A stretch of 36,562 nucleotides of DNA from Octopus sinensis (lineage: Eukaryota): assembly GCF_006345805.1 (NCBI RefSeq), contig NW_021824674.1:1-36562 (forward strand). The letters run 5' to 3'. The position numbers and the translations under genes were made by a program. Shown in pieces: positions 2,011 to 34,289 of this stretch. Every line of letters starts with the position of its first letter. The first letter of the stretch is position 1. Below the pieces are notes generated by a model. The model searched no databases. It had not been told where the DNA came from and saw only the letters and a list, made by a program, of their open reading frames with translations.

Positions 2011-2419
2011 AGGCGTAGGTGTGGCTTTGTGGTAAGTAGCTTGTTTACCAGCCACATGGTTCCGGGTTCAGTCCCACTGCGTGGCACCTTGGGCAAGTGT
2101 CTTCTACTATAGCCGCTGATCAACCAAAGCCTTGTGAGTGGATTTGGTAGGCGGAAACTGAAAGAAGCCCGTCGTATATCAGTATATATATATATGTATG
2201 TGTGTATATGTTTGTTTGTCTGTGTTTGTCCCCCTCCCCCAACATCGCTTAACAACCTAATGCTGGTGTGTTTACGTCACCGTAACATAGCTGCTCAGCA
2301 AAAGAGACCGATAGAATAAGTACTAGGCTTACAAAGAATAAGTCCCGGGGTCGATTTGTTCGACTAAAGGCTGTGCTCCAGCATGGCCATAGTCAAATGA
2401 CTGAAACAAGTAAAAGAGT
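2011..2419 (+). mobile_element. SINE-A, full length (tRNA head, CORE-like segment, internal TA/TG microsatellite, taaaagag tail)
   Basis: A box tggctttgtggt, B box ggttcagtccc, segment ccttgggcaagt, tail aatgactgaaacaagtaaaagag. About 16 copies or fragments in the window. Confidence 0.9.
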
Positions 2420-2480
2420 ATATAATTATAATCTACACTATATCACGTTTTTGCACTTACGTGCGCACCTGTGTGTATAT

Positions 2481-2792
2481 TACTCTTTACTCTTTTTTAC
2501 TCTTTTACTTGTTTCAGTCATTTGACTGCGGCCATGCTGGAGCACCGCCTTTAGTCGAGCAAATCGACCCCGAGACTTATTTTTTGTAAGCCCAATACTT
2601 ATTATATCGGTCTCTTTTGCCGAAAGGCTAAGTTCCGGGGACGTAAACACACACCAGCATTGGTTGTCAAGCAATGCTAGGAGGACAAACACAGACACAC
2701 AAACACACACACACATACATTTATATATATATAAGATATATATACGACCGGCTTCTTTCAGTTTCCGTCTACCAAATCCACTCACAGGCATT
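2481..2792 (-). mobile_element. SINE-A, lacking its head; abuts the retrozyme array
   Basis: ctcttttac tail repeats then body up to ccactcacaggcatt. The array starts where the SINE would continue ggtcggccc. Confidence 0.9.
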
Positions 2793-2987
2793 GGGGCTAA
2801 AAATACAGTAGCATCCACCCTTAGGGGTTAGCCATATTGAAATGGCAAAAAATAGTCACGGGTGTTACCGCTACTGTATAAACTCACTTTGATATTTATC
2901 AATGTTTGATTTCACTTTTTCAATATCAGCAGCAGTGGGCGCTGGAAAAAGTATAAGTATTTGTGAAGGAAATCTAATTCTCGGCGA

Positions 2988-3059
2988 CAACTATGATTGT
3001 CACACGCTGACGAGAGGTCAATACCTCGAAACTCGAGTCCACGTGTGTATCATAAGTTG
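2988..3059 (+). ncRNA. Type I hammerhead ribozyme, array copy 1 (2-nt insertion just 3' of the cleavage site)
   Basis: Helix I cacacg 3001-3006 / cgtgtg 3042-3047. Core CTGACGA 3007-3013. Helix II gagg-tcaata-cctc 3014-3027. GAAA 3028-3031. Palindromic actcgagt. GUC at 3037-3039 followed by an extra ca. Confidence 0.75.
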
Positions 3060-3343
3060 AAGACGGGAAGGATGACTTCCCTTTGCAAATACTGACAGGA
3101 CACAGATAGTGTGTCTATGGCCAGCTGGAGGAGTGTGTCCTCCTGGGGCTAAAAACTACAGTAGCATCCACCCTTAGGGGTTAGCCATATTGAAATGGCA
3201 AAAATACGTCACGATGTGTTACCGCTACTGTATATAACTCACTTTGATATTTATCATTGTTGATTTCACTTTTTCAATATATCAGCGACAGTGGGCGCTG
3301 GAAAAAGTATAAGTATTTGTGAAGGAAATCTAATTCTCGGCGA

Positions 3344-3412
3344 CAATATGATTGTCACACGCTGACGAGAGGTCAATACCTCGAAACTCGAGTCCGTGTG
3401 TATCATAAGTTG
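3344..3412 (+). ncRNA. Type I hammerhead ribozyme, array copy 2
   Basis: cacacg 3356-3361, CTGACGA 3362-3368, gagg/cctc helix II 3369-3382, GAAA 3383-3386, ctcgag, GUC cleavage after 3394, cgtgtg 3395-3400. Outer helix I tatgat/atcata. Confidence 0.9.
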
Positions 3413-3691
3413 AAGACGGGAAGGATGACTTCCCTTTGCAAATACTGACAGGACACAGATAGTGTGTCTATGGCAGCTGGAGGAGTGTGTCCTCTGGGGC
3501 TAAAAACTACAGTAGCACCACCCTTAGGGGTTAGCCATATTGAAATGGCAAAAATACGTCACGATGTGTTTACGCTACTGTATATAACTCACTTTGATAT
3601 TATCATTGTTTGATTTCACTTTTTCAATATCAGCGACAGTGGGCGCTGGAAAAAGTATAAGTATTTGTGAAGGAAACCTAATTCTCGGCGA

Positions 3692-3760
3692 CAACTATGA
3701 TTGTCACACGCTGACGAGAGGTCAATACTCGAAACTCGAGTCCGTGTGTATCATAAGTTG
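3692..3760 (+). ncRNA. Type I hammerhead ribozyme, array copy 3 (helix II one base shorter)
   Basis: cacacg 3705-3710, CTGACGA 3711-3717, gag-gtcaata-ctc 3718-3730, GAAA 3731-3734, ctcgag-TC with cleavage after 3742, cgtgtg 3743-3748. Confidence 0.85.
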
Positions 3761-4041
3761 AAGACGGGAAGGATGACTTCCCTTTGCAAATACTGACAGG
3801 ACACAGATAGTGTGTCTATGGCCAGCTGGAGGAGCGTGTCCTCCTGGGGCTAAAAACTACAGTAGCATCCACCCTTAGGGGTTAGCCATATTGAAATGGC
3901 AAAAATACGTCACGATGTGTTACCGCTACTGTATATAACTCACTTTGATATTTATCATTGTTGATTTCACTTTTTCAATATCAGCGACAGTGGGCGCTGG
4001 AAAAAGTATAGTATTTGTGAAGGAAATCTAATTCTCGGCGA

Positions 4042-4110
4042 CAACTATGATTGTCACACGCTGACGAGAGGTCAATACCTCGAAACTCGAGTCCGTGTGT
4101 ATCATAGTTG
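4042..4110 (+). ncRNA. Type I hammerhead ribozyme, array copy 4
   Basis: caactatgat 4042-4051 pairs perfectly with atcatagttg 4101-4110. Internal loop tgt/t. cacacg/cgtgtg helix. CTGACGA 4061-4067, helix II 4068-4081, GAAA 4082-4085, cleavage after 4093. Confidence 0.92.
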
Positions 4111-5039
4111 AAGACGGGAAGGATGACTTCCCTTTGCAAATACTGACAGGACACAGATAGTGTGTCTATGGCCAAGCTGGAGGAGTGTGTCCTCCTGGGG
4201 CTAAAAACTACAGTAGCATCCACCCTTAGGGGTTAGCCATATTGAAATGGCAAAAATACGTCACGATGTGTTACCGCTACTGTATATAACTCACTTTGAT
4301 ATTTATCATTATATATAATATATATAATATATATATATAATATATTATATAATAGATATATATATATATATACATATATATATAGAACATATATATATAT
4401 ATTTATATATATAATAACAAATAATAAATAAAACGTATGCATATATACATACATATATGTACGTGCCTACATCTATATGTATATATACATGCATATATGG
4501 GTACAGGACACCAAAAAAACGTCGAACACAACGAGAAACGAAAACATGAACACAAAACCAAGGAAATGGACATTTTTCTATATATATATATTTATATATA
4601 TATATACATAGATATATATATATTTGGAGGGGAGAAATCAAAAAGAACGAAGCAGTGAATTAAAATCAGGGGAAAATATAAAAGTTTTGTGAGAGGAAAA
4701 GAGTAAAGGATGGAACAGGGAAGGAGAAAGAGGTAATAGATAATAAGAAGGAAAGATGAGAGACAGAAGGAGAAAAGTAGAGAGAGAGAGGATAAGAAAG
4801 AGAGAGAGAGAGAGAGAGAGCAAGAGGGAGAGGAAGAGAGAAAACGAAGGGTGTTGAGAAGCTGCTCTCTGAAAATTGATATAAATGGCGATGGAAATTT
4901 TTGCTTTGCGTGGCGTTATTATCAAATCGAAGAAAGAGAAAAAAAAACGAACATGTAGAAGTCACAGGGGAACTGTGATGAGCAAGCGAAGAAATATTAC
5001 AAAACAGTAGCCATCTCTGTATTCATTTATAATGCAGAT

Positions 5040-7786: not shown

Positions 7787-8167
7787 CTCTTTTTACTCTT
7801 TTACTCTTTTACTTGTTTCAGTCATTTGACTGCGGCCATGCTGGAGCACCGCCTTTAATCGTGGGCTATAGCAGAAGGCTTGTGAGTGGATTTGGTAGAT
7901 GGAAACTGAAAGAAGCCTGTCGTATATATGTATATATATATATATATGTATGTGTGTGTATGTTTGTATGTCTGTGTTTGTCCCCCTAACATTGCTTGAC
8001 AACCGATGCTGGTGTGTTTACGTCCCCGTTACTTAGCGGTTCGGCAAAAGAGACCGATAGAATAAGTACTGGGCTTACAAAGAATAAGTCCTGGGGTCGA
8101 TTTGCTGGACTAAAGGCGGTGCTCCAGCATGGCCGCAGTCAAATGACTGAAACAAGTAAAAGAGAGA
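7787..8167. mobile_element. Rearranged SINE-A with tails at both ends (inverted)
   Basis: Minus-strand tail at 7787-7860, plus-strand body and tail at ~7876-8167. Confidence 0.75.
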
Positions 8168-8434
8168 AAGAGAGAGTTGACTGATGAATTTGAGCGAATT
8201 TTCTTGAAAATCAATCGATAAATTATTGACGTCTTTATAGAAAAAGCAATTTTTCTTTAAATGATGTTATGTTAAATCTATTTTCAAAGGTTGTGGTTCG
8301 GAGGCGTCGTAAGCGTCTTGCCGAGCTCAATTTTGCCTTTTGGTGTCGATAAATAAAGTACCAGCACTGGGCTGCTGTCTAATGTGCAACTAAATCATCC
8401 TCGATTGCAAGTAATGGCCTTAGCTTTTAGATAG

Positions 8435-8656
8435 ACTCTTTTACTCTCTCTTTTACTCTTTTACTTGTTTCAGTCATTTGACTGCGGCCATGCTGGAGCA
8501 CCGCCTTTAATCGAGCAAATCGACCCCGGGACTTATTCTTTGTAAGCCCACTACTTATTCTATCGGTCTCTTTTGCCGAACTGCTAAGTGACGGGGACGT
8601 AAACACACCAGCATCGGTTGTCAAGCAATGCTAGGGGGACAAACACAGACAACACA

Positions 8657-8694
<38 letters not shown>

Positions 8695-9780
8695 TACGAC
8701 AGGCTTCTTTCAGTTTCCGTCTACCAAATCCACTCACAAGGCATTGGTCGACCCGGGGCTATAGCAGAAGACACTTGCCCAAGATGCCACGCAGTGGGAC
8801 TGAACCCGGAACCATGTGGTTGGTTAGCAAGCTACTTACCACACAACCACTCCTGCGCCTATATACTTAGTATTATTTTTTATTCTTTTATTTTTTTTCA
8901 GTCATTTGACTACATCCTTGCTGGAGCACCGCCTTGAAGGATTTCAGTCAAATAAATCGAACCCAGGACTAATTTTTTAAGCTTAGTACTTATTCTATCG
9001 GTCTCTTGTGCAGACCCGTTAAATTACGGGGACGTAAACACACCAACACCGTTGACAAGCAGTGAATCGGGGGGGGAGGACAAATACAGACACTCATACA
9101 CACACACATATGACGGGCTTCTTTCAGTTTCCGTGAACCAAATCCACTCACAAGGCTTTTGTCGGCCTGAGGCTATACTAGGAGACACTTGCCCAAGGTG
9201 CCACGCAGTGGGACTGAACCCGGTACCATGCAGTTGGGAAGCAAGCTTCTTACCACACTACCACCAGTTTCATACGCGTCTCATTCTGCGAGTTTTCGTC
9301 GGTGCTATTTTGTGAATTTTAATCTTTAAGAGTTATTATAATTTTTGTAGGGAAATTATAATAGGCGTAGGAGTGGCTGTGTGGTAAGTAGCTTGCTAAC
9401 CAACCACATGGTTTAGGGTTCAGTCCCACTGCGTGGCATCTTGGACAAGTGTCTTCTGCTATAGCTGCGGGCCGACCAATGCCCGGTAGACGGAAACTGA
9501 AAGAAGCCTGTCGTATATATGTATATATGTGTGTGTATGTGTATGTATGTGTATGTGTGTATGTTTGTGTCTGTGTTTGTCCCCCTAGCATTGCTTGACA
9601 ACCGATGCTGGTGTGTTTATGTTCCCGTTACTTAGCGGTTCGGCAAAAGAAACCGATAGAATAAGTACTAGGCTTACAAAGAATAAGTTCCGGGGTCGAT
9701 TTGCTCGACTAAAAAAGGCGGTGCTCCAGCATGGCCGCAGTCAAATGACTGAAACAAGTAAAAGAGTAAAAGAGTAAAGT
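8435..9780. mobile_element. Three adjacent SINE-A copies: 8435-8866 (-), ~8890-9260 (-, variant), 9361-9778 (+)
   Basis: Consensus head, body and tail visible in each. Confidence 0.88.
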
Positions 9781-9971
9781 GTAAATCAAATAATTTCACG
9801 ATTATACTTTCGTAATCTTCATTTCCAACCATATTTTTAGTCCTAGTGTAGCTATGAAATCAGAATAGTTTAGAATAGAAATTGTTATTAATTTGTATAA
9901 CATGGCTCTTCTTTGATTCCATCATTTATATTAGAGTAAAGATTTTTTGCCAACATAACATGGCAATCCTG

Positions 9972-10138
9972 GTTTAGGACGAATGTTGATGTAATTTAGC
10001 CCCAGGAGACATCGTCTCCGGCTGGCTATACGACACGATCTGTGTCTTTATATTTTCGAACATAAGCACACACATCGCCCGATCTGAGATTTGAACCCGC
10101 GATCCCGCTGCTCTAACCACTAGGTCATGTGCCTCCAC
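9972..10138 (-). mobile_element. tRNA-headed SINE (E-type head) whose 3' part matches the retrozyme hairpin module
   Basis: Minus strand: A box tgacctagtggttag, B box ggttcaaatc, then gacacagatcgtgtcgtatagccagccggagacgatgtctcctggggctaaa (10046-9995). Confidence 0.7.
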
Positions 10139-10427
10139 TTTTGAATATATAAAAAGTGCTTATTATGCGATCGCTCTGCTATTCAGCAGTAGGTCATGAG
10201 CTGAACTAGAGACACACATTTGCACTATTCAAATACCTTGTGCAATAGAGTTGGAAGTGGTTTATTAATTATTCACACAGCTAAAAGACCAAAACAGCAA
10301 CATTAGTGATACTATTATCATTATCATTATTATTACTATTATCGTTGTTGTTGTTGTTGTTGTTGTTGTTGTTGCTGTTGTTGTTGTTGTTGTTGCTGTT
10401 GCTGCTGCTGTTACTATTGCTGTTATT

Positions 10428-10985: not shown

Positions 10986-11102
10986 ATTATTATTATTATT
11001 ATTATTATTATCATAATTATGTTTGGTTGTTGTCCTGTATTTGTACAAGTTGACTCCAAATCTCACCCATAGACCTCAACTTAGAAGTTCAAGTTAGTGT
11101 TC

Positions 11103-11853
11103 GGCGAGCTGGCAGAAACGTTAGCACCCCGGGCGAAATACGTAGCCGTATTTCGTCTGCCGTTACGTTCTGAGTTCAAATTCCGCCGAAGTCGACTTTG
11201 CCTTTCATCCTTTCGGGGTCGATTAAATAAGTACCAGTTACGCACTGGCTCGATATAATCGACTTAATCCGTTTGTCTGTCCTTGTTTGTCCTCTCTGTG
11301 TTTAGCCCCTTGTGGGTAGTAAAGAAATAGTTATGAATAGTGTGCCATATTACTGATCGACTGTACTCCCTCCCCGCAAAGTTCAGGCCTTACGTCTCTA
11401 TTAGAAAGAATTATTATTGTTTTCATTGTTGTTGTTGTTGTTAAGGCGGCGAGCTGGTAGAGTCGTTAGCACGCCGGGCAAAATGCCTAGCCGCATTTCG
11501 TTGGTCTTTACGTTCTGAGTTCGAATTACACCGCAGTTGACTTTGCCTTTGAATCGTTCGGATTCGATAAAACAGGCACCAATTGAGTACTTGGGTCGAT
11601 GTGATCGACCGTACCCCTCCTCCGAATTTCAGGCCTTGTGCCTAGAGTAGAAAGTATTATTATTGTTGTTATTGTTGTTATTGTTGTTATTAAGGCGGCG
11701 AGCTGACAGAATCTTAGCACGCCGGGCAAATAAATCATAGGGCTTTGGCCGACTCGAGGTTAAATTATAAAACACTTGCCCAAGGTGCCACGCAATGGGA
11801 CTGAACTCCGGAACACGTGGTTGGGAAGTAAACTTTTTACCACGCAGCCACGT
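11103..11853. mobile_element. SINE-B copies (11103-11330, 11445-11655, head 11694-11730, all +) and a SINE-A fragment (11740-11853, -)
   Basis: ggcggcgagctggcagaaacgttagcac head, B box gagttcaaattcc, two different 3' tails. Confidence 0.85.
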
Positions 11854-14270: not shown

Positions 14271-15056
14271 GGCGGCGAGCTGGCAGAAACGTTAGCACGC
14301 CGGGCGAAATGCGTCGCCGCATTTCGTCTGCCGTTACGTTGTGTGTTCAAATTCCGCCGAGGTCGACTTTGCCTTTCATCCTTTCGGGGTCGATAAATAA
14401 AGTACCAGTTTTGCACTGGGGTCGATGTAATTGACTTAATCCCTTTGTCTGTCCTTGTTTGTCCCCTCAATATTTAGCCCCTTGTGGGTAGTAAAGAAAT
14501 AGGTATTTCGTCTGCCGTTACATTCTGAGTTCAAATTCCGCCGAGGTCGACTTTGCTTTTCATCCTTTCGGGGTCGATAAATTAAGTACCAGTTACGCAC
14601 TGGGGTCGATGTAATCGACTTAATCCGTTTGTCTGTCCTTCTTTGTCCTCTCTGTGTTTAGCCCCTTGTAGGTAGTAAAGAAATAGGTATTTCCTCAGCC
14701 GTTACGTTCTGAGTTGAAATTCCGCCGAGGTCGACTTTCCCTTTCATCCTTTCGGGGTCGATAAATTAAGTACCAGTTACGCACTGGGGTCGATGTAATC
14801 GACTTGATACCTTTGTATGTCCTTGTTTGTCCCCTCTGTGTTTAGCACCTTGTGGGTAGTAAAGAAATAGGTATTTCGTCTGTCGTTACGTTCTGAGTTG
14901 AAATTCCGCCGAGGTCGACTTTGCCTTTCATCCTTTCAGGGTCGATAAACTAAGTACCAGTTACGCACTGGGGTCGATGTAATCGACTTAATCCCTTAGT
15001 CTGTCCTTGTTTGTCCTCTCTGTGTTTAGTCCCTTGTGGGTAGTAAAGAAATAGGT
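14271..15056 (+). mobile_element. SINE-B with one head and four tandem 184-bp bodies, flanked by a 17-bp TSD
   Basis: Bodies start at 14321, 14505, 14689 and 14873. ggtatcttctgaatgga at 14253-14269 and 15054-15070. Confidence 0.9.
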
Positions 15057-15204
15057 ATCTTCTGAATGGACAAATGCAGTTAAAACAAATGTAATTGGGA
15101 AAATAGTTAAAGTTCTCCACGTTTCAGCATTCATGAGCGGAAAACACTTTTCGGATGAAGGAGAGTTGAATATTAAAAACACTCTTTTTCAGGAGAACTA
15201 TTCA

Positions 15205-20974: not shown

Positions 20975-21974
20975 TCCCTCCGCGTAGAAAAGACCTTATC
21001 GATGAAGAAAAATCTGTCATCATCAAGGAAAGTGCTACAGGCACCTCTCTTCATGTCACTGCGGAGAGTTAAGTCGCCATGTGGACACGGTTAGACGATT
21101 CCCTGGAGAAACCCTTCACCAAGGAAGAAAAGATCTGATTGCGGGACCTCCAAGAATGTGACAGGTAAGGATTTAAGGAATATTGGCCGTAAGTTACGCC
21201 GGAAACCTGGACATACAAGCAAAGCCATTTTCACTGCCTCCGGACTTCCACATGTACCGAAAACCACCAGAAACCTCATCCGCGGGACCATGGCTTCCGT
21301 GCGAGAACTCCTGAAACTGCCTCGTCACAGGAGTTTGAGGTTTCAATGAGCCCAAAAGTAGATGATGTTAGACATAAGTTTGTTCTGTTCACTAACGAAA
21401 CCCGGGTGACCCTTGACGGACTTGACGGTTGGGCAAATGTTTGGGTCTGCTTTGGAGATGAACGTCACGAACGGTTACGACATTAACAACTGGATGGAGG
21501 CGTCGTGTTGTAGGCTGGTATCATTGTGGACAGAGTTTTTGGCCCAGTCAGGGTGCCTGAAGAGGTTAAAGTGACGCAGCCACCTACTGCAAACTCCTGA
21601 AGGAGGGCTTGGATCCCTTACTAGATGACATACCGCAGTCACTTCTCAGGAGTCTCGTATTTATGCATGACAACGCTCTCCCACTCTGCTAGACCACCCG
21701 CACATTACTAGAGTCTTACGGTATAGAAGGTGAAAGGTTGATGGTGTGGCCACCAGCATCTCCGGATCTCAACCGTATCAGAAGTCTCTGCTCCATCATT
21801 AAACAAGATGTTTATGCGGATGGACGCCAATTTACGTCGAAAGAAGACTTATGAGTGACAATCAAAGCTGCAGCAGAGGCAGTCCAACATTCTATTCTTA
21901 AGAAATTGACGCATTCCATGACTAATAGGGTTTTTTAAGTTATCCGTAGAAACAACGCTCATGTGGCTAAATAA
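20975..21974 (+). pseudogene. Disrupted Tc1-like transposase, reconstructed DD37E spacing (TRT-like)
   Basis: Manual translation across stops and frameshifts: VLFTNETRVTLDGLDGW (21388-), GGVVL*AGII, GPVRVPEEVKVT, FMHDNA (D at 21669), LMVWPPASPDLNRI(R)SL, IKQDVYADGRQF. 37 residues between the second D and the E position after repairing two frameshifts. The first D and the E are mutated. Confidence 0.8.
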
Positions 21975-22278
21975 GTCATTATGTCAATAAATGTTATATT
22001 TCGTTTTTGGTTTGCAAGATTCTTTATGAGTTCGTGTGTTGAAGCATATTCTGTTGTGTCTGGAGAGAGTAAGTTTCTTTTAGTGCCTTATAATGTAACA
22101 CACTCACCAGTAAAATTTCCCCTTTTTTCATATTTTTATTTTCCTAAAATTTTCGTTGCGTCTTGCAACCTTTTCAATAGTCTTGTTATAATATTATTAT
22201 AACAAGAAATCAGTGGCAGAAGTCACTAGAAAAACTCTTATATATTCGCAAACAGGCTTTGTCTGTCATCGTGATCCG

Positions 22279-22485
22279 GTGATTACCGCCCGTTGATAAG
22301 AGACAATAATCTCGAAACCGCGGTCCGGTGCGTATCACTTAGGCTTACGAGAATGGGATGGCCTCCCTTTGCAAATACCTTAAGAGCACAGAAATTGTGT
22401 CTAAAGCCAGCTGGAGACGATGATCTCCTGGGGCTAAAAAGCTACAGTAATACCCACCCCTAGTGGTTAGCCATATTGAGATGGC
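22279..22485 (+). mobile_element. Diverged solo copy of the retrozyme unit, with a U3-A8 variant hammerhead (22279-22338)
   Basis: Aligns by eye to the array unit (tccctttgcaaatac, ccagctggag, ctcctggggctaaaaa, ttagccatattga-atggc). HHR: TTGATAA 22293-22299, gaga-caataa-tctc 22300-22313, GAAA 22314-22317, ccgcgg, TC with cleavage after 22325, outer helix gtgat/atcac. Confidence 0.8.
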
Positions 22486-22841
22486 TAGTATACTTTACAT
22501 TGTCGAGCGCTTACTGTTTACATCTCGTTCTGAGATTTAATAATATTATTATGGTTTTCTGTTCAATATTTACTCAATGTATGCTTAATATGTATCATTA
22601 TCCTTCATTTCCTGAAGAAAAAAAATGTCTAGATGGGCTACTTTCATGCAAAAACTATTAACGTGTCTCACCTAAAAACTGAAGAATCTGAAATAAAAAA
22701 AATGAAAGGATGTTACACCGTATAATGGAAACATTAAAATGGTGTTGCCATCGTGTGCAAACTAGCTGGGAAACGTTTTATCAAAATCGATTAACAGAAA
22801 ATCGAGAAATCCTAAATTTCACTTCTAAGCTAATAGCGTAG

Positions 22842-23593: not shown

Positions 23594-24017
23594 ATTATAT
23601 ATATATATCTATATATTTATATATAGAGGGCATTAATATGTTCAATAAGAAATAATTATTTTCGAAATTTATTCTCTTATGAGGTTTTCACGCTATCTAC
23701 CTGACAATTTCTTGTTAAGTTTTCCTTATTAAGTAGTTGTCCTTAATTGCTATATATCTATATATATATACTAGCAAACGCCTCCTCCCCACCGCACATT
23801 GGACTGTTTGTATAAGTGAAGAGGGTTAACTTGGATGGTGTTAAGCTGTGCAAATGTTTGGTGATTGTATGGGGCTGAAAATTCCTGAGACTTTAAAACT
23901 GTTGACTGTTTCTTCTAAATAAGGAAAATTGATTGATAGTGAATCTTAACACTGTGAACCTTTTCAAAATTGTCTTGAGGCCAATAAAATGAAAAAAAGG
24001 CTGTTCAGCCCACATAT

Positions 24018-24432
24018 TCTCTTTTACTCTTTGTTACTTGTTTCAGTCATCTGACTGCGGCCATGCTGGAGCACCGCCTTTAATCGAGCAAATCGACCCC
24101 GAGACTTATTCTTTTGTAAGCCCAGTACTTATTCTATCGGTCCCTTTTGCCGAACCGCTAGGTAACGGGGACATAAACACACCAGTATCGGTTGTCAAGC
24201 AATGCTAGGGGGACAAACACAGACACACAAACACACACACGCATATATATATATATATACATATATACGAAGGGCTTCTTTCAGTTTCCGTCTACCAAAT
24301 CCACTCACAAGGCATTGGTCGGCCCGGGGCTTTAGCAGAAGACACTTGCCGAAGGTGCCACGCAGTGGGACTGAACCCGGGACCATGTGGTTGGTAAACA
24401 AGCTACTTACCATACAGCCACTCCTGCGCCTA
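24018..24432 (-). mobile_element. SINE-A, full length
   Basis: Consensus tail, body and head on the minus strand. Confidence 0.9.
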
Positions 24433-25655: not shown

Positions 25656-26094
25656 TATGATATGATATGATGGCAATCCCTCAAGGTCGAGGATGATGGT
25701 CTTCGGGCAAATTTACTGGTGAGTCCGTAGGTGACTGATGAGACCAATTCTTGCTTGAAAAGATCGGTCGCAGTGCGGACATCTAGTGCCGGAAGGGAGA
25801 GTCGCACGTGGTTGTTGTCGGCGCTCCTTCCGTCGTCGTCTTTTCTCCTCCAGCTCTGCAGACCTTTCCGACTCGAAAGTCGCCGTTCCCTCATGGATGG
25901 TGGTTTTCCAGAGTGGTCTGTTTTTTTGCCGTTTCCTCCCAGTTAGTGAAGTCGATGTCACACTTTTTGAGGTTCGTTTTCAGGGAGTCCTTGTAGCGTT
26001 TCTTCTGGCCTCCTTTTTGTACGCTTGCCGTCTTTGAGTTGGGAGTAGAAGATCTGTTTGGGAAGTCGTTCGTCAGTCATTCTAACCACGTGGC
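25656..26094 (-). mobile_element. 5'-truncated RTE/BovB-clade LINE 3' end
   Basis: HVVRMTDERLPKQIFYSQLKDGKR, then (frameshifted) YKDSLKTNLKKCDIDFTNW, RPLWKTTIHEG...CPHCDRSFQARIGLISHLRTH, typical of the RTE C-terminus. Short 3' UTR and (atcat)n tail at 25656-25671. Flanking repeat acagtat at 25652-25658 and 26096-26102. Confidence 0.88.
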
Positions 26095-27014
26095 AACAGT
26101 ATAGGTAGAAGAGGGAAAATGAGATGGTAGCACATCCGCGGAACATTGGTTTATGTGTGTCAGTGGATGACCCTATGAAGTTCAGCTGCCGAGCATTTGT
26201 CTGTATGCAGTTTAGGATTATCTGTATGTCCAGACGAAACACGTAACAACAAATAAACTTGTTATACCTGTTCAGTTTATCAACTTATTAGATGATTAAT
26301 AATAGCTCTATACGTGTCTGGTTTAACTTCGTGTGTGTGTGAGGCGCGTGTACATACGTATGTACATACAGAGGTACATACACAAATGCTAACACTCACG
26401 TACCCACATACACATATACACACACACACATACAATCTTTATTCTCCCGTTTTAATATCTTATTTGGATTCATGTGTACTTTTACATCTAATGAGCATTT
26501 TGGTAGCACCGCTTCTGACTATTTTCTTTCGATTCAAGATCATGCAGCCTTTGTGGTTGCTTGACGTGATGAAAACAGAGCTCAAATCGCCCTAAAAAAA
26601 TGGCCGAGATTGCATCATTCGTTGTTTTTTTTTTATTTTCCTCTTTTTCTCCCTCTTCTCCCCCTCCTTAATTCCTTTGTCCCTCTTTTCCTCTCTCTTC
26701 TCTTTTCACGTGACCGCTGACCGACTACTGGCCTTTTTGGGTTTGGCAGTGGTCGCTGTAACCTCCAGTTTATGCCTGACCTTTACTCAAACAAACCTGA
26801 GGTGAATCAGAACCTGAGCACCACAAATAGAATAAATCTTGAGAAAACAATCTGCATCTTCCGAAAGTTATACAGAATCCTTCATTTGCTTCTTCGAATG
26901 TCAAATACTTGTGCACCATGACTGATTAAAAGTGAGCTTCATCGAGGCTGATCTGCAGCAATTTCATAAAAGCAGAATGATACTTTCTTATAAAGTAATG
27001 CAATAAAGTAATGT

Positions 27015-27995: not shown

Positions 27996-28326
27996 ACAGC
28001 AACAGCATGAGACAACTATAGAATCTCTATGCGGTTGCTCATCCTCCTAGACATCGCAGCCAAGACAACCTTCAAATCATAGATTGAGGACATTGGGTAA
28101 CAATATAGTTAGTGAGGTACGAAATGGGAGATCCTTGGTCTGCTTGGTCGCAGTTGACATGGAACGAAAGAGCAACGACAGCAAGAACAACATTTGTATA
28201 TTGGGAAAAATTAAGAGAAAATTAAACTGATTAAGACTAATTAACAAAAATACACATCCGGATTGTTTAATTTATACTTTCTTTATATGTTTGTATGTGG
28301 GTAGGAGTATTTGCGTGTGTGTATGT

Positions 28327-28753
28327 GTGTGTATATGTATGTATACTCTTTTACTCTTTTACTTGTTTCAGTCATTTGACTGCGGCCATGCTGAAGCACC
28401 GCCTTTAGTCGAGCAACTCGACCCCGGGACTTATTCTTTTGTAAGCCCAGTACTTATTCTATCGGTCTCTTTTTGCCGAACCGCTAAGTGACGGCGACGT
28501 AAACACACCAGCATCGGTTGTCAAGCAATGCTAGGGGGACAAACACAGACACACAAACATATACAGACACATACATATATATACATATATACAACAGGCT
28601 TCTTTCAGTTTCCGTCTACCAAATCCACTCACAAGGCATTGGTCGGCCCGGGGCTATAGCAGAAGACACTTACCCAAGGTGCCACGCAGTGGGACTGAAC
28701 CCGCAACCATGTGGTTGGTTAGCAAGCTACTTACCACACAGCCACTCCTGCGC
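28327..28753 (-). mobile_element. SINE-A, full length
   Basis: Consensus match to the other copies. Confidence 0.9.
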
Positions 28754-28870: not shown

Positions 28871-29410
28871 TGAAGTTGCGTGGCTTAGTGGTTAGGGCAT
28901 TCGGCTCACGATTGTAAGGTCGTGAGTTCAATTCTCGGCGACGCGTTGTGTCCTTGAGCAAGGCACTTTATTTTCACGTTGCTCCAGTTCACTCAGCTGG
29001 CAAAGGGTCAGTCTTGTCACACTCTGTGTCACGCTGAATCTCCCTGACTACTACGTTAGGGGTACACGTGTCTGTGGACTGCTCAGCCACTTGCACGTTT
29101 ATTTCACGAGTAGGCTGTTCCGTTGATCGTATCAGCTGGGACCCTCATCGTCATAACCTATTTTTTACTACCCACAAGGGGCTAAACTCAGAGAGGACAA
29201 ACAAGGATAGACGAACGGATTAAGTCGATTATATCGACCCCAGTGCTTAACTGGTACTTATTTAATCGACCCCGAAAGGATGAAAGCAGAGTCAACCTCG
29301 GCGGAATTTGAACTCAGAACGTAACGACAGACGAAATACCGCAAAGCATTTCGCCCGGCATGCTAACGTTTCTGCCAGCTCGCCGCCTTATAAACGACGG
29401 AGTGCTCCTT
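28871..29410 (+). mobile_element. SINE-D head with an alternative tail, interrupted near its 3' end by SINE-B (29158-29388, -)
   Basis: The tail matches 32918-33095 (-). The terminal ...cgacggagtgct resumes after the SINE-B insertion. Confidence 0.75.
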
Positions 29411-30413: not shown

Positions 30414-30585
30414 AGGCGCAGGAGTGGCTGTATGGTAAGTAGCTTGTTTACCAACCACATGGTTCCGGGTTCAGTCCCACTGCGTGGTACCTTGGGTAAG
30501 TGTCTTCTGCTATAGCCTCGGGCCGACCAAAGCCTTGTGACTGGATTTGGCAGACGGAAACTGAAAGAAGCCTGTCGTATATATG

Positions 30586-30617
<32 letters not shown>

Positions 30618-30828
30618 CTTGTGTGTCTGTGTTTGTCCCCCTAGCATTGCTTGACAACCGATGCTGGTGTGTTTACGTCCCCGTCACTTAGCGGTTCGGC
30701 AAAAGAGACCGATAGAAAAAGTACTGGGCTTACAAAGAATAAGTCCCGGGGTCGAGTTGCTCGACTAAAGGAGGTGCCCCAGCATGGCCGCAGTCGAATG
30801 ACTGAAACAAGTAAAAGAGTAAAAAGAG
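30414..30828 (+). mobile_element. SINE-A, full length
   Basis: Consensus head to tail. Confidence 0.9.
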
Positions 30829-30844
30829 AGAGAATAGTTCTATA

Positions 30845-33307: not shown

Positions 33308-33832
33308 GCACTGAGTTAGGATATATATGTTTCTTTATTACCCACAAGGGGCTAAACATAGAGGGGACAAACAAGGACAGACAAACGGATTAAGTCGATT
33401 ACATCGATCCCAGTGCGTAACTGGTACTTAATTTATCGACCTCGAAAGGATGAAAGGCAAAGTCGACCTCGGCGGAATTTGAACTCAGAATGTAACAGCA
33501 GACGAAATACGGCTATGCATTTCGTCCGGCGTGCTAACGGTTCTGCCTGCTCGCCGCCTTGCACTGAGTTAGGCTATATATGTTTCTTTATTACCCACAA
33601 GGGGCTAAACATAGAGGGGACAAACAAGGACAGACAAAGGGATTAAGTCGATTAGATCGACCCCAGTGCGTAACTGGTACTTAATTTATCGACCTCGAAA
33701 GAATGAAAAGCAAATGCGACCTAGGCGGAATTTGAACTCAGAATGTAACAGCAGACGAAATACGGCTACGCATTTCGTCCTGCGTGCTAACGGTTCTGCC
33801 AGCTCGCCGCCTTGCACCGAGTTAGGCTATAT
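33308..33832 (-). mobile_element. Two tandem SINE-B copies (period 253) separated by a triplicated ~20-bp flank
   Basis: gcac(t/c)gagttagg(a/c)tata at 33308, 33561 and 33814. Confidence 0.88.
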
Positions 33833-34289
33833 AATCCAAGCGTTTACCCCCATGAAGCACTTTTAGTGGTAGCAGCTATGAGAAAATTGAAAGAGAGTAG
33901 CTCCATTACGACGCTATGGCTCTGAAGATCCACAAGTTAACCAGATTTATCTCGGTTGTCGGAATCAATAAAATGTTCACACTTCGATATGCAGACAATA
34001 AGTATGCTAATCGAACAACGATTCATATCAGTGACTGCCTCGATACACTTGATGATAAAAGACAGACACCCGGCCATTTTATTTACACAGCTTTAATACA
34101 TACTTGTATTCCTTAGTCGAATTGTCAAGCTACAAAGCTACAACGGAGCCAATTATCTTACCGAATCCTTCTACACTCCTTTCATCTCTTTTACTCGCTC
34201 TATTCGTATGTTTCTTTTGAATGTACACGATTTCCAGGAACCGCGCATTGTAGAATGATTGTACTAATCGGCGTGATTGTCAAATCGAT

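What the first reader, a model, noticed from the sequence alone, without database searches (positions are those of the whole stretch)
2793..4310. Tandem ~351-bp hammerhead-ribozyme array: candidate cephalopod non-LTR retrozyme / circRNA source
Seen in sequence: ~4.3 near-identical 351-bp units, each with a complete type I hammerhead. It has an extended helix I (caactatgat/atcatagttg plus cacacg/cgtgtg, with a tgt/t internal loop), CUGACGA, a 4-bp helix II with a 6-nt loop, GAAA, an 8-nt palindrome ACUCGAGU in place of a stable helix III, and a GUC cleavage triplet. Predicted cuts after 3039, 3394, 3742 and 4093 release monomers of 355, 348 and 351 nt. Established knowledge: tandem HHR repeats of a few hundred nt are the architecture of newt satellite 2, Schistosoma Sm-alpha, cave-cricket pDo500 and metazoan non-LTR retrozymes. 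Their transcripts self-cleave and, in retrozymes, accumulate as circular RNAs. Palindromic-helix-III minimal HHRs are typical of Penelope-like elements (PLEs) and can act as dimers, which a tandem transcript allows in cis. Inference: this is a non-coding retrozyme family mobilised in trans, probably by a PLE reverse transcriptase. I cannot tell whether it has been described for this taxon.
Basis: partly seen in the sequence, partly recalled or inferred. Interest (0 to 1): 0.92.

Follow-up and report, generated by a model that had tools for sequence, protein, structure and literature searches.

The report
Tandem hammerhead-ribozyme repeat in octopod DNA
A 351-bp non-coding repeat, present 4.3 times in a row and carrying a self-cleaving hammerhead RNA motif in each full copy, is a real and apparently undescribed octopod example of a well-known class of animal mobile elements ("non-LTR retrozymes"); it is a new family, not a new kind of thing.

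Summary
A 351-bp tandem array lies at 2792-4310 (4.3 copies, 96% matches). It carries four complete type I hammerheads with intact cores, cutting after 3039, 3394, 3742 and 4093. They match Rfam Hammerhead_1 over the full model but score just below its curated threshold (27-32 vs 34 bits). The unit is non-coding, 43% G+C and predicted to fold very stably (z = -8 linear, -5.9 circular). Helix III cannot fold alone but pairs well between two copies, so a double hammerhead is expected, as in newts and axolotl.

The window gave three new findings:
- A second, 76%-identical monomer at ~22207-22539. Its hammerhead keeps all helices through compensatory changes and has the documented U3-A8 core covariation.
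- Both insertions end at the same internal unit position (212-217 nt past the cut site), next to A/T-rich DNA. This fits retrotransposition with site-specific initiation, as shown for Penelope-like elements, but rests on two copies.
- A SINE-like element at ~9935-10139 (-) shares the unit's ~125-nt central domain.

An octopod origin is supported. Expression, cleavage, circles and the mobilising enzyme are untested. Verdict: new member of a known kind; moderate interest.

The parts
2792..4310 (+). Tandem array of the 351-bp unit: a 5'-truncated first unit starting at unit position ~103 (counted from the cut site), then further units to a 3' end at unit position 217. It holds four hammerheads.
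   Evidence: TRF period 351, 4.3 copies, 96% matches. nhmmer unit boundaries 2792-2901, 2906-3257, 3259-3605, 3610-3958, 3960-4309. Flanks show no similarity to the unit.
3001..3047 (+). Hammerhead 1 (cut after 3039). The core is intact, but a 2-nt CA insertion directly after the cut site sits at the base of helix I.
   Evidence: RF00163 27.4 bits, E = 4.6e-4, model 1-45/45; unit alignment.
3356..3400 (+). Hammerhead 2 (cut after 3394). Core and proximal helices are intact; one C is missing in distal helix I (~3348).
   Evidence: RF00163 32.2 bits, E = 1.1e-5.
3705..3748 (+). Hammerhead 3 (cut after 3742). The core is intact; a 1-nt deletion reduces helix II to 3 bp.
   Evidence: RF00163 29.7 bits, E = 7.6e-5.
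4042..4111 (+). Hammerhead 4 with its full extended helix I (Rfam core match 4055-4099; cut after 4093). This is the best-preserved copy.
   Evidence: RF00163 32.2 bits. The fold of 4040-4112 forms the 10 + 6 bp helix I, -28 kcal/mol, z = -4.5.
4310..4413 (.). (TA)n-type microsatellite directly abutting the array's 3' end. It is either the A/T-rich insertion target or a 3' tail of the element.
   Evidence: TRF rows 4310-4413 and 4299-4416; junction ...tatttatcatt|atatataat.
2480..2791 (-). Truncated copy of the window's abundant SINE, forming the array's 5' flank. It breaks off at ...ggcatTGG|ggcta (3-nt overlap TGG). The rest of this SINE is not found downstream, and no target-site duplication is seen.
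   Evidence: BLAST of 2400-2795 against the window finds at least 10 copies, and homology stops at 2794; junction comparison.
22207..22539 (+). Copy 2: a diverged, roughly monomer-length copy (~76% identity where alignable). It runs from about unit position 236 through the hammerhead to unit position 212. The secure part is 22280-22539.
   Evidence: BLAST 76% over 186 nt. nhmmer 22207-22539, E = 5.6e-87. Shuffle tests: core z = 66; 3' extension not significant, z = 1.7.
22275..22348 (+). Hammerhead of copy 2, with core UUGAUAA (U3-A8 in place of C3-G8). Helix II is GAGA/UCUC and the helix III palindrome is ACCGCGGU. Helix I is extended with an internal loop.
   Evidence: RF02275 Hammerhead_HH9 34.9 bits (gathering 52), E = 4.3e-7, model 1-77/77. 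Alignment A1. U3-A8 is a documented natural covariation (PMC4209133).
9935..10139 (-). Copy 3: a SINE-like element. Its tRNA-like head (about 10063-10139) has an A box TGACCTAGTGG and a B box GGTTCAAATCT. It is followed by a ~125-nt central domain (9935-10060) homologous to unit positions ~58-175. It has no hammerhead, and its tail differs.
   Evidence: nhmmer E = 1.6e-10. Alignment A2. Box scan and similar heads elsewhere in the window. The head is NOT recognised by ARAGORN or Rfam.

Best explanation
This is an insertion of a non-autonomous, non-coding retroelement of the metazoan 'non-LTR retrozyme' class, in an octopod genome.

Shown from the sequence:
- A 351-bp unit repeated head to tail, with a canonical metazoan type I hammerhead in each full unit.
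- An RNA predicted to fold into a very stable, largely self-paired structure closed by helix I.
- A second, older copy elsewhere in the window. Its hammerhead has diverged by compensatory changes, which implies selection on the ribozyme fold in the family's active lineages.

Inferred mechanism:
1. The array, or a master array elsewhere, is transcribed as a multimer.
2. Helix III (ACUCGAGU) cannot fold alone, so neighbouring hammerheads pair through it into a double hammerhead. They cut after each GUC and release ~351-nt monomers with 5'-OH and 2',3'-cyclic phosphate ends.
3. By analogy with coral, mussel and axolotl retrozymes, a host tRNA ligase (RtcB) circularises the monomers.
4. New genomic copies arise by target-primed reverse transcription at a nick in A/T-rich DNA. 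Synthesis starts at a fixed internal site of the RNA (unit position ~212-217, in a small AU-rich hairpin). It runs for a variable distance along a multimeric or circular template: about 0.9 unit for copy 2 and 4.3 units for the array.
5. The most likely enzyme is a Penelope-like element (PLE) reverse transcriptase/GIY-YIG endonuclease. That enzyme has been shown to cut A/T-rich DNA and to initiate internally on tandem-repeat RNA.
For: Architecture:
- Array of period 351, 4.3 copies.
- Four hammerheads with all core nucleotides present.
- G+C 43%, and no open frame longer than 66 codons on a consensus multimer.
- No Pfam domain in the unit's frames.
- These features match the published definition of the class (PMC7229834).

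RNA structure:
- Linear monomer -123.3 kcal/mol, z = -8.0.
- Circular form -118.6 kcal/mol, z = -5.9.

Dimer requirement:
- The helix III hairpin alone gives 0 kcal/mol; the duplex between two copies gives -12.1 kcal/mol.
- The minimum-energy cofold of two motifs is the double hammerhead, at -33.9 kcal/mol. A single-hammerhead fold gives -7.8 kcal/mol.
- The same behaviour is described for canonical metazoan and amphibian hammerheads (PMC4209133; PMC7229834).

Family under selection, and dispersed:
- Copy 2 at 22207-22539 has a full-length hammerhead match.
- Against the array's hammerhead it shows double changes that keep pairing (A1): helix II G-C to A-U; two pairs of the helix III palindrome; proximal and distal helix I A-U to G-C.
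- It also has U3-A8 in place of the C3-G8 tertiary pair, a covariation known from natural hammerheads.

Retrotransposition:
- The array ends at unit position 217 and copy 2's homology ends at position 212. Both ends abut A/T-rich DNA, while the 5' starts differ.
- These ends are not at the ribozyme cut site, so the template was not a cleaved linear monomer.
- For a PLE, cutting at 5'-ATT-3' in A/T-rich DNA, internal initiation ~85-92 nt past the hammerhead cut, and genomic ends falling on that site were shown experimentally (PMC11167929).
- Penelope elements are present and recently active in octopus (PMC13282606; PMC8967140).
Against: - There is no evidence here of transcription, cleavage or circular RNA.
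- The hammerheads score below Rfam's curated thresholds.
- Three of the four array hammerheads carry small indels that could impair them if real.
- No target-site duplication was found, and the 5' junction lies in a truncated SINE whose other half is missing.
- The shared 3' end rests on two insertions. Chance coincidence within 5 nt is about 3%.
- Copy 2's 5' limit is uncertain.
- No reverse transcriptase or endonuclease remnant lies in the window.
- The hammerhead is not the PLE min-type.
- No homology to a PLE pseudo-LTR could be tested.
- The A/T-rich DNA after both copies could be a SINE-like 3' tail rather than a target.
- No further copies could be retrieved from any public collection reachable here.
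Confidence: 0.7

Rival explanations
1. A SINE-type element mobilised by a LINE, not a PLE. In this reading the unit is a composite retroposon: a hammerhead module, a SINE central domain and a 3' tail. An octopus LINE reverse transcriptase (RTE, CR1, Dong-R4 or L1-Tx1) recognises its defined 3' end. The A/T-rich repeats after both copies are the element's own microsatellite tail. The hammerhead acts only as a transcript-processing signal, as proposed for Schistosoma Sm-alpha.
For: - The unit's ~125-nt central domain is shared with a tRNA-like-headed SINE-like element in the same window.
- It has a defined 3' end and variable 5' ends.
- Both copies are followed by A/T-rich simple sequence. Many mollusc SINEs end in short tandem repeats (PMC4758252).
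- LINEs and SINEs are the most abundant and most recently active elements in octopus (PMC13282606).
- A LINE-like C-terminal fragment lies in the window.
Against: - The unit has no B box and only weak A-box-like matches, and no tRNA-like region by ARAGORN or Rfam.
- LINE-driven retroposition of a linear transcript does not explain a 4.3-unit head-to-tail array ending exactly at the unit's 3' terminus, unless the template was multimeric.
- The tails of the unit and of the SINE-like copy 3 differ.
- In vertebrates, retrozyme families are related to PLE pseudo-LTRs and co-occur with PLEs (10.64898/2026.07.22.740005).
Confidence: 0.17
2. An inert short satellite or segmental tandem duplication with a fossil hammerhead. 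In this reading the array grew by replication slippage or unequal crossing-over, it is not transcribed into functional RNA, and the dispersed relatives are old fragments moved by ordinary rearrangement.
For: - No target-site duplication.
- Three of four hammerheads have small indels.
- Scores are below Rfam gathering thresholds.
- There are no expression data.
- The window holds other tandem arrays made of SINE-like sequence without ribozymes (14321-15058 and 33308-33833). Local tandem amplification therefore does occur in this genome.
Against: - All core nucleotides are intact in all four copies.
- Compensatory changes and the U3-A8 covariation between the two subfamilies imply past selection on the ribozyme.
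- RNA stability is extreme (z = -8).
- The 3' terminus is shared between independent insertions and lies next to A/T-rich DNA.
- The array is only 4.3 units long and sits in a transposon-rich region, unlike a classical satellite block.
Confidence: 0.1
3. Part of an autonomous Penelope-like element: the repeats would be tandem pseudo-LTRs of a PLE whose coding part lies outside the array or has been deleted.
For: PLEs carry hammerheads in their pseudo-LTRs and insert as partial tandems into A/T-rich DNA (PMC4209133; PMC8557442; PMC11167929).
Against: - There is no reverse transcriptase or GIY-YIG coding sequence anywhere in the 36.5-kb window.
- The flanks of the array are a SINE and a microsatellite.
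- Five consecutive unit copies have nothing between them.
- The hammerhead architecture is canonical, not the PLE min-type.
Confidence: 0.03

Closest known systems
Amphibian non-LTR retrozymes (newt 'satellite 2'; axolotl Rtz331/Rtz353; Cervera & de la Pena 2020, PMC7229834)
   Same: - Tandem non-coding units of ~330-350 bp.
- One canonical type I hammerhead per unit, with extended helix I, a 4-bp helix II and a helix III too short to fold alone. Cleavage is therefore efficient only as a double hammerhead in multimeric RNA.
- Low G+C and a highly self-paired monomer RNA.
   Different: - A different phylum, with no detectable sequence relationship tested.
- The copy number here is unknown; axolotl has ~120,000 motifs.
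- Cleavage and circles are shown experimentally for axolotl, not here.
- According to that paper, most invertebrate retrozyme hammerheads cleave well as single motifs, so a dimer-type motif in a mollusc is the less usual case.
Mussel (Mytilus galloprovincialis) retrozymes, ~350 nt (PMC7229834)
   Same: Same phylum, similar unit length, a type I hammerhead in short tandem repeats, and the same expected RNA life cycle.
   Different: - The mussel hammerheads are described as lacking most nucleotides of the usual loop 1-loop 2 interaction, yet they self-cleave efficiently.
- The octopod motif has the 6-bp helix I plus internal loop and a 6-nt loop 2 typical of canonical motifs, with a minimal helix III.
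- Sequence homology could not be tested because no mussel sequences are held.
Schistosoma Sm-alpha SINE-like hammerhead repeats
   Same: A link between a type I hammerhead and SINE-type sequence. Here the unit shares its central domain with a tRNA-like-headed SINE-like element in the same window.
   Different: From my own knowledge, Sm-alpha itself carries pol III promoter boxes. The octopod unit has no B box and no tRNA-like part. The SINE-like relative lacks the hammerhead.
Penelope-like element pseudo-LTR hammerheads and PLE insertion mechanism (PMC4209133; PMC11167929)
   Same: - A palindromic or absent helix III that implies dimeric action.
- The U3-A8 core covariant occurs in PLE-related motifs and in copy 2.
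- Tandem organisation, A/T-rich insertion sites, and insertion ends at a fixed internal position downstream of the hammerhead.
   Different: - No RT/EN coding part.
- Helix I and II dimensions are canonical (6 and 4 bp), not min-HHR (4-5 and 7-8 bp).
- The putative initiation site lies 212-217 nt past the cut site, against ~85-92 nt in the characterised anole element, and in an AU-rich rather than an AC-rich hairpin.
Rfam RF00163 Hammerhead_1 and RF02275 Hammerhead_HH9
   Same: Full-length alignments to both models. All conserved core positions are present in the array copies. The HH9-like extended helix I with internal loop is present in both subfamilies.
   Different: Scores fall below the curated gathering thresholds (32.2 vs 34; 34.9 vs 52). 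HH9 is a single-copy, conserved intronic motif of amniotes, not a repeat.

Membership tests
Hammerhead ribozyme, type I (canonical metazoan architecture) | Conserved catalytic core: C3 U4 G5 A6 N7 G8 A9 ... G12 A13 A14, the A15.1-U16.1 pair, and H17 at the cut site | tested here: met
   CUGACGA...GAAA...GUC is present in all four array copies. Copy 2 has U3/A8, a documented covariation of the C3-G8 pair.
Hammerhead ribozyme, type I (canonical metazoan architecture) | Open helix I of ~6 bp with loop or bulge, closed helix II of 4 bp, and a short palindromic helix III (PMC4209133) | tested here: met
   Helix I is 6 bp, an internal loop, then ~10 bp. Helix II is GAGG/CCUC with a 6-nt loop. Helix III is ACUCGAGU.
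Hammerhead ribozyme, type I (canonical metazoan architecture) | Score at or above Rfam's curated gathering threshold (RF00163: 34 bits) | tested here: not met
   Best score 32.2 bits. There is no hit in gathering mode. E = 1e-5 over the full model in sensitive mode. This is a curated score cut-off, not a structural property.
Hammerhead ribozyme, type I (canonical metazoan architecture) | Mg2+-dependent self-cleavage at the predicted site | not testable with these tools
   Needs in vitro transcription of monomer and dimer constructs.
Metazoan non-LTR retrozyme (Cervera & de la Pena 2020) | Type I hammerhead within head-to-tail repeats of ~150-450 bp, from dimers to multimers | tested here: met
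   Period 351 bp, 4.3 copies, four hammerheads.
Metazoan non-LTR retrozyme (Cervera & de la Pena 2020) | Low G+C (<50%), non-coding, no LTRs | tested here: met
   G+C 43%. Longest open frame 66 codons, with no Pfam domain. The flanks are unrelated to each other and to the unit. PBS and PPT motifs were not searched for specifically.
Metazoan non-LTR retrozyme (Cervera & de la Pena 2020) | Monomer RNA predicted to adopt a stable, highly self-paired structure | tested here: met
   -123.3 kcal/mol, z = -8.0 linear. -118.6 kcal/mol, z = -5.9 circular.
Metazoan non-LTR retrozyme (Cervera & de la Pena 2020) | Multiple dispersed genomic copies (a mobile family) | tested here: inconclusive
   Two hammerhead-bearing loci lie in 36.5 kb (array and copy 2). 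The genome-wide count is not obtainable: public collections gave no further copies.
Metazoan non-LTR retrozyme (Cervera & de la Pena 2020) | Target-site duplications, when present, longer than 4 bp | tested here: inconclusive
   None was recognised at either insertion. The array's 5' junction is in a truncated SINE and its 3' junction is in (TA)n.
Metazoan non-LTR retrozyme (Cervera & de la Pena 2020) | Expressed as unit-length linear and circular RNAs | not testable with these tools
   No transcriptome data are reachable.
Non-autonomous derivative of Penelope-like elements | Sequence homology of the unit to a pseudo-LTR of a PLE of the same genome | not testable with these tools
   There is no PLE in the window, and no octopus repeat library or genome is accessible. 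Penelope elements do exist in octopus.
Non-autonomous derivative of Penelope-like elements | Insertion into A/T-rich DNA, with insertion ends at a fixed internal RNA site downstream of the hammerhead (PMC11167929) | tested here: inconclusive
   Both insertions end at unit position 212-217 beside A/T-rich DNA. With n = 2, a chance coincidence is about 3%.
Non-autonomous derivative of Penelope-like elements | PLE-type minimal hammerhead (helix II 7-8 bp, helix I 4-5 bp, no helix III) | tested here: not met
   Helix II is 4 bp, helix I is 6 bp plus an extension, and a palindromic helix III is present.
tRNA-derived SINE | tRNA-related head with pol III A and B boxes | tested here: not met
   The unit has no B box within 2 mismatches and only weak A-box-like matches. 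ARAGORN and Rfam find no tRNA-like region. The relative, copy 3, does have such boxes.
Classical satellite DNA | Long homogeneous arrays (tens to thousands of units) without dispersed short copies | tested here: not met
   There are only 4.3 units, bounded on both sides by unrelated DNA within the window, plus a dispersed monomer.

The most novel reading that the evidence does not exclude
The ~125-nt structured central domain is shared by the hammerhead unit, its diverged subfamily and a tRNA-like-headed SINE-like element. It could be a portable module that recruits the mobilising reverse transcriptase. Retrozymes and SINE superfamilies would then exchange heads (hammerhead versus pol III tRNA-like promoter) around a common core. 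That would assign a function to the long-enigmatic conserved central domains of SINEs, and would link circular-RNA retrozymes and SINEs as two solutions built on one mobilisation module.
Probability: 0.12. Interest if true: 0.7.

Novelty: new member of a known kind. Interest (0 to 1): 0.35.

Why it matters
Tandem hammerhead repeats are now understood as retrozymes, which in corals, mussels and salamanders yield abundant small circular RNAs. A cephalopod family would extend the class to a lineage whose genome is dominated by SINEs, LINEs and active Penelope elements, and whose RNA biology is already unusual.

This locus gives three testable handles:
- **Mobilising enzyme:** a putative fixed reverse-transcription start site beside A/T-rich targets, which can separate PLE from LINE mobilisation once the family is mapped genome-wide.
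- **Ribozyme evolution:** two subfamilies differing by compensatory changes, including the U3-A8 core pair. This is a natural experiment on ribozyme evolution.
- **Module exchange:** a central domain shared with a SINE-like element, which hints at exchange of modules between retrozymes and SINEs.

None of this changes the known picture of the class unless the third point holds up.

Tried and rejected
- **Rfam at gathering threshold:** no hit. Only the sensitive mode shows the hammerheads.
- **Fifth motif match:** 25735-25769 has no helix II, by eye, and no Rfam hit. I treat it as chance.
- **Reaching eukaryotic assemblies through unit ORFs:** a consensus 66-codon frame found no homologue. Ten window ORFs are not in the protein collection by exact look-up, although trailing stop codons in the translated references may have affected that look-up.
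- **DNA pattern scans:** core-domain and hammerhead patterns gave 0 hits in metagenome contigs and in viral contigs.
- **SINE translation as a probe:** it returned one Argonauta hians protein. Its 20-kb locus has the SINE head but no hammerhead unit.
- **Verbatim sequence strings in the literature:** none found.
- **Copy 2 as more than one unit:** considered, then rejected. The extension past 22539 is not significant (z = 1.7; 32 of 500 shuffles reach it). The region upstream of 22207 is not significant either.
- **Copy 2's core as two inactivating mutations:** my first reading, revised. The two positions are the C3-G8 pair and the change is the documented U3-A8 covariation.
- **Copy 3's head as a tRNA:** not confirmed by ARAGORN or Rfam.
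- **Tc1/mariner-like remnant at 21193-21483, seen by eye:** no Pfam support.
- **RT or endonuclease in the window:** none found.


Full report
**1. Observation**

Tandem Repeats Finder reports a single array at 2792-4310 with period 351, 4.3 copies, 96% matches and 2% indels. The hammerhead core pattern CTGANGA-N-GAAA-N-GTC occurs four times inside it, ending at 3039, 3394, 3742 and 4093. In the whole window there are five matches against 0.19 expected, and no shuffle reaches five. The fifth match (25735-25769) lacks a helix II and I treat it as chance.

Rfam finds nothing in the window at gathering threshold. In sensitive mode on 2700-4400, all four copies align to RF00163 Hammerhead_1 over the whole model (1-45 of 45). 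The scores are 32.2, 32.2, 29.7 and 27.4 bits against a gathering score of 34, with E = 1e-5 to 5e-4.

- Helix I is CACACG/CGUGUG, an internal loop UGU/U, then CAACUAUGAU/AUCAUAGUUG.
- The core is CUGACGA.
- Helix II is GAGG/CCUC with loop UCAAUA.
- GAAA, the palindrome ACUCGAGU and the GUC cut site follow.

There are caveats:
- Three copies have an extra A in the distal helix I strand.
- Hammerhead 1 has a CA insertion just after the cut site.
- Hammerhead 2 lacks a C in distal helix I.
- Hammerhead 3 lacks a C in helix II.
- Of 26 variable columns among units, 15 are single-base indels. That pattern is compatible with long-read assembly noise, so I do not weigh these defects heavily.

**2. 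The unit as an RNA**

The consensus is about 353 nt and 43% G+C. It has no open frame longer than 66 codons on a multimer, and no Pfam domain in its frames.

The cut-to-cut monomer folds at -123.3 kcal/mol, against -87.8 ± 4.4 for dinucleotide shuffles (z = -8.0). The circular form gives -118.6 kcal/mol (z = -5.9). The complementary strand is less exceptional (z = -4.7). Helix I closes a long, largely paired body, as described for retrozyme circles (PMC7229834).

Helix III does not fold on its own (0 kcal/mol), but two copies pair at -12.1 kcal/mol. The minimum-energy cofold of two 45-nt motifs is exactly the double hammerhead, with trans helix I, two helices II and an 8-bp helix III. It gives -33.9 kcal/mol, against -7.8 for a single-hammerhead fold.

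This is the behaviour described for 'canonical' metazoan type I hammerheads: helix I 6 bp, helix II 4 bp, and a short palindromic helix III that is active as a dimer in tandem transcripts (PMC4209133). It was shown experimentally for axolotl retrozymes (PMC7229834).

**3. Relatives inside the window**

BLAST and a profile search found two more loci.

*Copy 2* lies on the + strand. The secure part is 22280-22539 (z = 66 against shuffles), and it is collinear back to about 22207. It is about 76% identical to the unit and runs from about unit position 236, through the hammerhead, to unit position 212. A tempting extension past 22539 is not significant (z = 1.7), and I rejected it.

Its hammerhead (22275-22348) matches RF02275 Hammerhead_HH9 over the full 77-position model, at 34.9 bits against a gathering score of 52, E = 4e-7. 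Compared with the array's motif, pairing is kept through double changes (alignment A1):
- Helix II G-C becomes A-U.
- The helix III palindrome ACUCGAGU becomes ACCGCGGU, which changes two pairs and is still a palindrome.
- Proximal helix I A-U becomes G-C, with one bulged U.
- Distal helix I A-U becomes G-C.

Its core reads UUGAUAA. I first took this as two inactivating mutations. The changed positions are C3 and G8, which pair in the active ribozyme, and U3-A8 is a documented natural covariation with about 1,300 motifs in Schistosoma (PMC4209133). The two loci therefore represent two subfamilies whose ribozyme evolved under structural constraint. This is the strongest internal evidence that the hammerhead is, or was, functional.

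*Copy 3* lies on the minus strand at about 9935-10139. It shares only the central ~125 nt (unit positions ~58-175; nhmmer E = 1.6e-10; alignment A2). In place of the hammerhead module it has a head with a pol III A box (TGACCTAGTGG, 1 mismatch) and a B box (GGTTCAAATCT, 2 mismatches) 30 nt apart. Similar heads occur elsewhere in the window. ARAGORN and Rfam do not call it a tRNA, so 'tRNA-derived SINE' remains a by-eye assignment.

The shared domain keeps three common hairpins, with 4 of 26 pairs changed on both sides. With only three sequences this is suggestive at most. I could not tell whether it corresponds to a named SINE core domain.

**4. Boundaries and mode of insertion**

The array starts at unit position ~103 and ends at unit position 217, directly against a ~100-bp (TA)n tract. 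Copy 2's homology ends at unit position 212, followed by ataatattattatgg. Two independent insertions thus end within 5 nt of each other in a 351-nt unit, which is roughly a 3% coincidence. Both ends lie next to A/T-rich DNA, and the 5' starts differ.

The ends are far from the ribozyme cut site, so the templates were not cleaved linear monomers. They were multimeric or circular RNAs on which reverse transcription began at a fixed internal site.

This is what was shown in vitro, and in genomic copies, for a Penelope-like element:
- The endonuclease cuts 5'-ATT-3' in A/T-rich DNA.
- Synthesis initiates in a stem-loop 111-118 nt into the ORF. That is ~85-92 nt past the hammerhead cut site, which lies at +26.
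- Insertion ends fall on that site.
- Hammerhead cleavage is dispensable (PMC11167929).

Penelope elements are abundant in coleoids and recently active in Octopus vulgaris, with 30 families and 329 recent insertions (PMC13282606; PMC8967140). In vertebrates, retrozyme families group with PLE pseudo-LTRs (10.64898/2026.07.22.740005).

Points against:
- No target-site duplication is visible.
- The array's 5' junction lies in a truncated copy of the window's abundant SINE (overlap TGG), and the rest of that SINE is missing.
- The window holds no RT or endonuclease remnant.
- The A/T-rich sequence after both copies could equally be a SINE-style 3' tail, which keeps a LINE-mediated route open.

**5. 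Source organism and prior description**

A translation of the flanking SINE hits a single protein in the 5.8-billion-protein collection. It is a hypothetical protein of the octopod Argonauta hians. Its locus shares the ~113-nt SINE head at 81-92% identity with many copies in the window, but has no hammerhead unit. An octopod origin is therefore supported; the species is not determined.

Full-text searches found no paper that combines hammerhead or retrozyme with octopus or cephalopods, apart from two incidental mentions. No paper contains the sequence strings. The 2020 retrozyme paper and its supplement do not mention cephalopods. Two octopus and coleoid repeat surveys do not mention hammerheads, retrozymes or satellites. 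Subscription literature, Rfam full alignments and Repbase/Dfam could not be checked.

**6. Verdict**

The feature meets every sequence-level criterion of the metazoan non-LTR retrozyme class and fails only Rfam's score cut-off, by about 2 bits. It is best filed as a new (octopod) member of a known kind.

The mechanism is inferred by analogy and from the two insertions seen here, and none of it is demonstrated. It consists of multimeric transcript, double-hammerhead cleavage, ligase-mediated circularisation, and target-primed reverse transcription from a fixed internal site, probably by a PLE enzyme.

The interesting residue is the shared central domain with a SINE-like element and the putative internal initiation site. 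Both can be settled by a genome-wide survey of the family.

Noticed in passing
window 14321-15058 and 33308-33833: Two further tandem arrays without any ribozyme match: 184 bp x 4.0 (92% matches) and 253 bp x 2.1 (95% matches). By eye they are built from SINE-like sequence with a tRNA-type B box (gagttcaaattccgccgaggtcgac). Related single copies seem to occur near 685-1263, 11084-11263 and 29038-29400, judged from similar frame translations. Tandem amplification of SINE-like units seems common in this region.
   Followed up: no
window, at least 10 copies, e.g. 7875-8174 (-), 8446-8747 (+), 24015-24318 (+), 28326-28642 (+), 30527-30844 (-): A very abundant ~300-400-bp SINE with an internal CA/TA microsatellite. 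Its ~113-nt head is 81-92% identical to a locus on an Argonauta hians chromosome-scale contig (L001 10040-10157). It contains a CCTTGGGCAAGT-like stretch reminiscent of CORE-SINEs, which have been reported in octopus (OR1/OR2). The CORE assignment was not tested.
   Followed up: partly
window 2124-2794: Immediately upstream of the array, two copies of that SINE lie in inverted, tail-to-tail orientation. 2400-2794 matches 2518-2124 on the opposite strand at 80% identity, with the symmetry centre near 2459. This long inverted repeat could promote breakage or rearrangement at the array's 5' junction.
   Followed up: no
window ~22180-22209 (inside copy 2): A 30-nt insertion relative to the array unit (agtcttgttataatattattataacaagaa) that is itself a near-perfect hairpin or palindrome. 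A typical 20-nt indel variant is also described for coral retrozymes.
   Followed up: no
window 25716-26284 (-): Frames resembling the C-terminal end of a LINE ORF2: RLPKQIFYSQLKDGKRTKRRP, GGQKKRYKDSLKTNLKKC, and a C2H2 finger CPHCDRSFQARIGLISHLRTH. Only the zinc finger gets weak Pfam support (zf-C2H2 21.7 bits, below its cut-off of 25.2). It is a decayed LINE 3' fragment and not evidently linked to the array.
   Followed up: partly
window 21193-21483 (+): A frame with a Tc1/mariner-like motif (FTNETRVTLDGLDGWANVWV) seen by eye. No Pfam family matched at E <= 0.1, so it is unconfirmed.
   Followed up: partly
window 2792-4310 (differences between units): Most differences between units are single-base indels or apparent swaps of adjacent bases, for example ttaccgc versus tttacgc and gcagcag versus gcgacag. 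This looks more like unpolished long-read assembly error than like mutation. If so, the units are closer to identical than 96%, and the hammerhead 'defects' may be artefacts.
   Followed up: no
unit position 230-234 (e.g. window 3972-3976, cacTTTTTcaat): The only run of four or more T on the + strand of the unit lies ~13 nt downstream of the shared insertion 3' end. It would act as a pol III terminator if the unit were ever transcribed by pol III. It would then argue against long pol III multimers.
   Followed up: no
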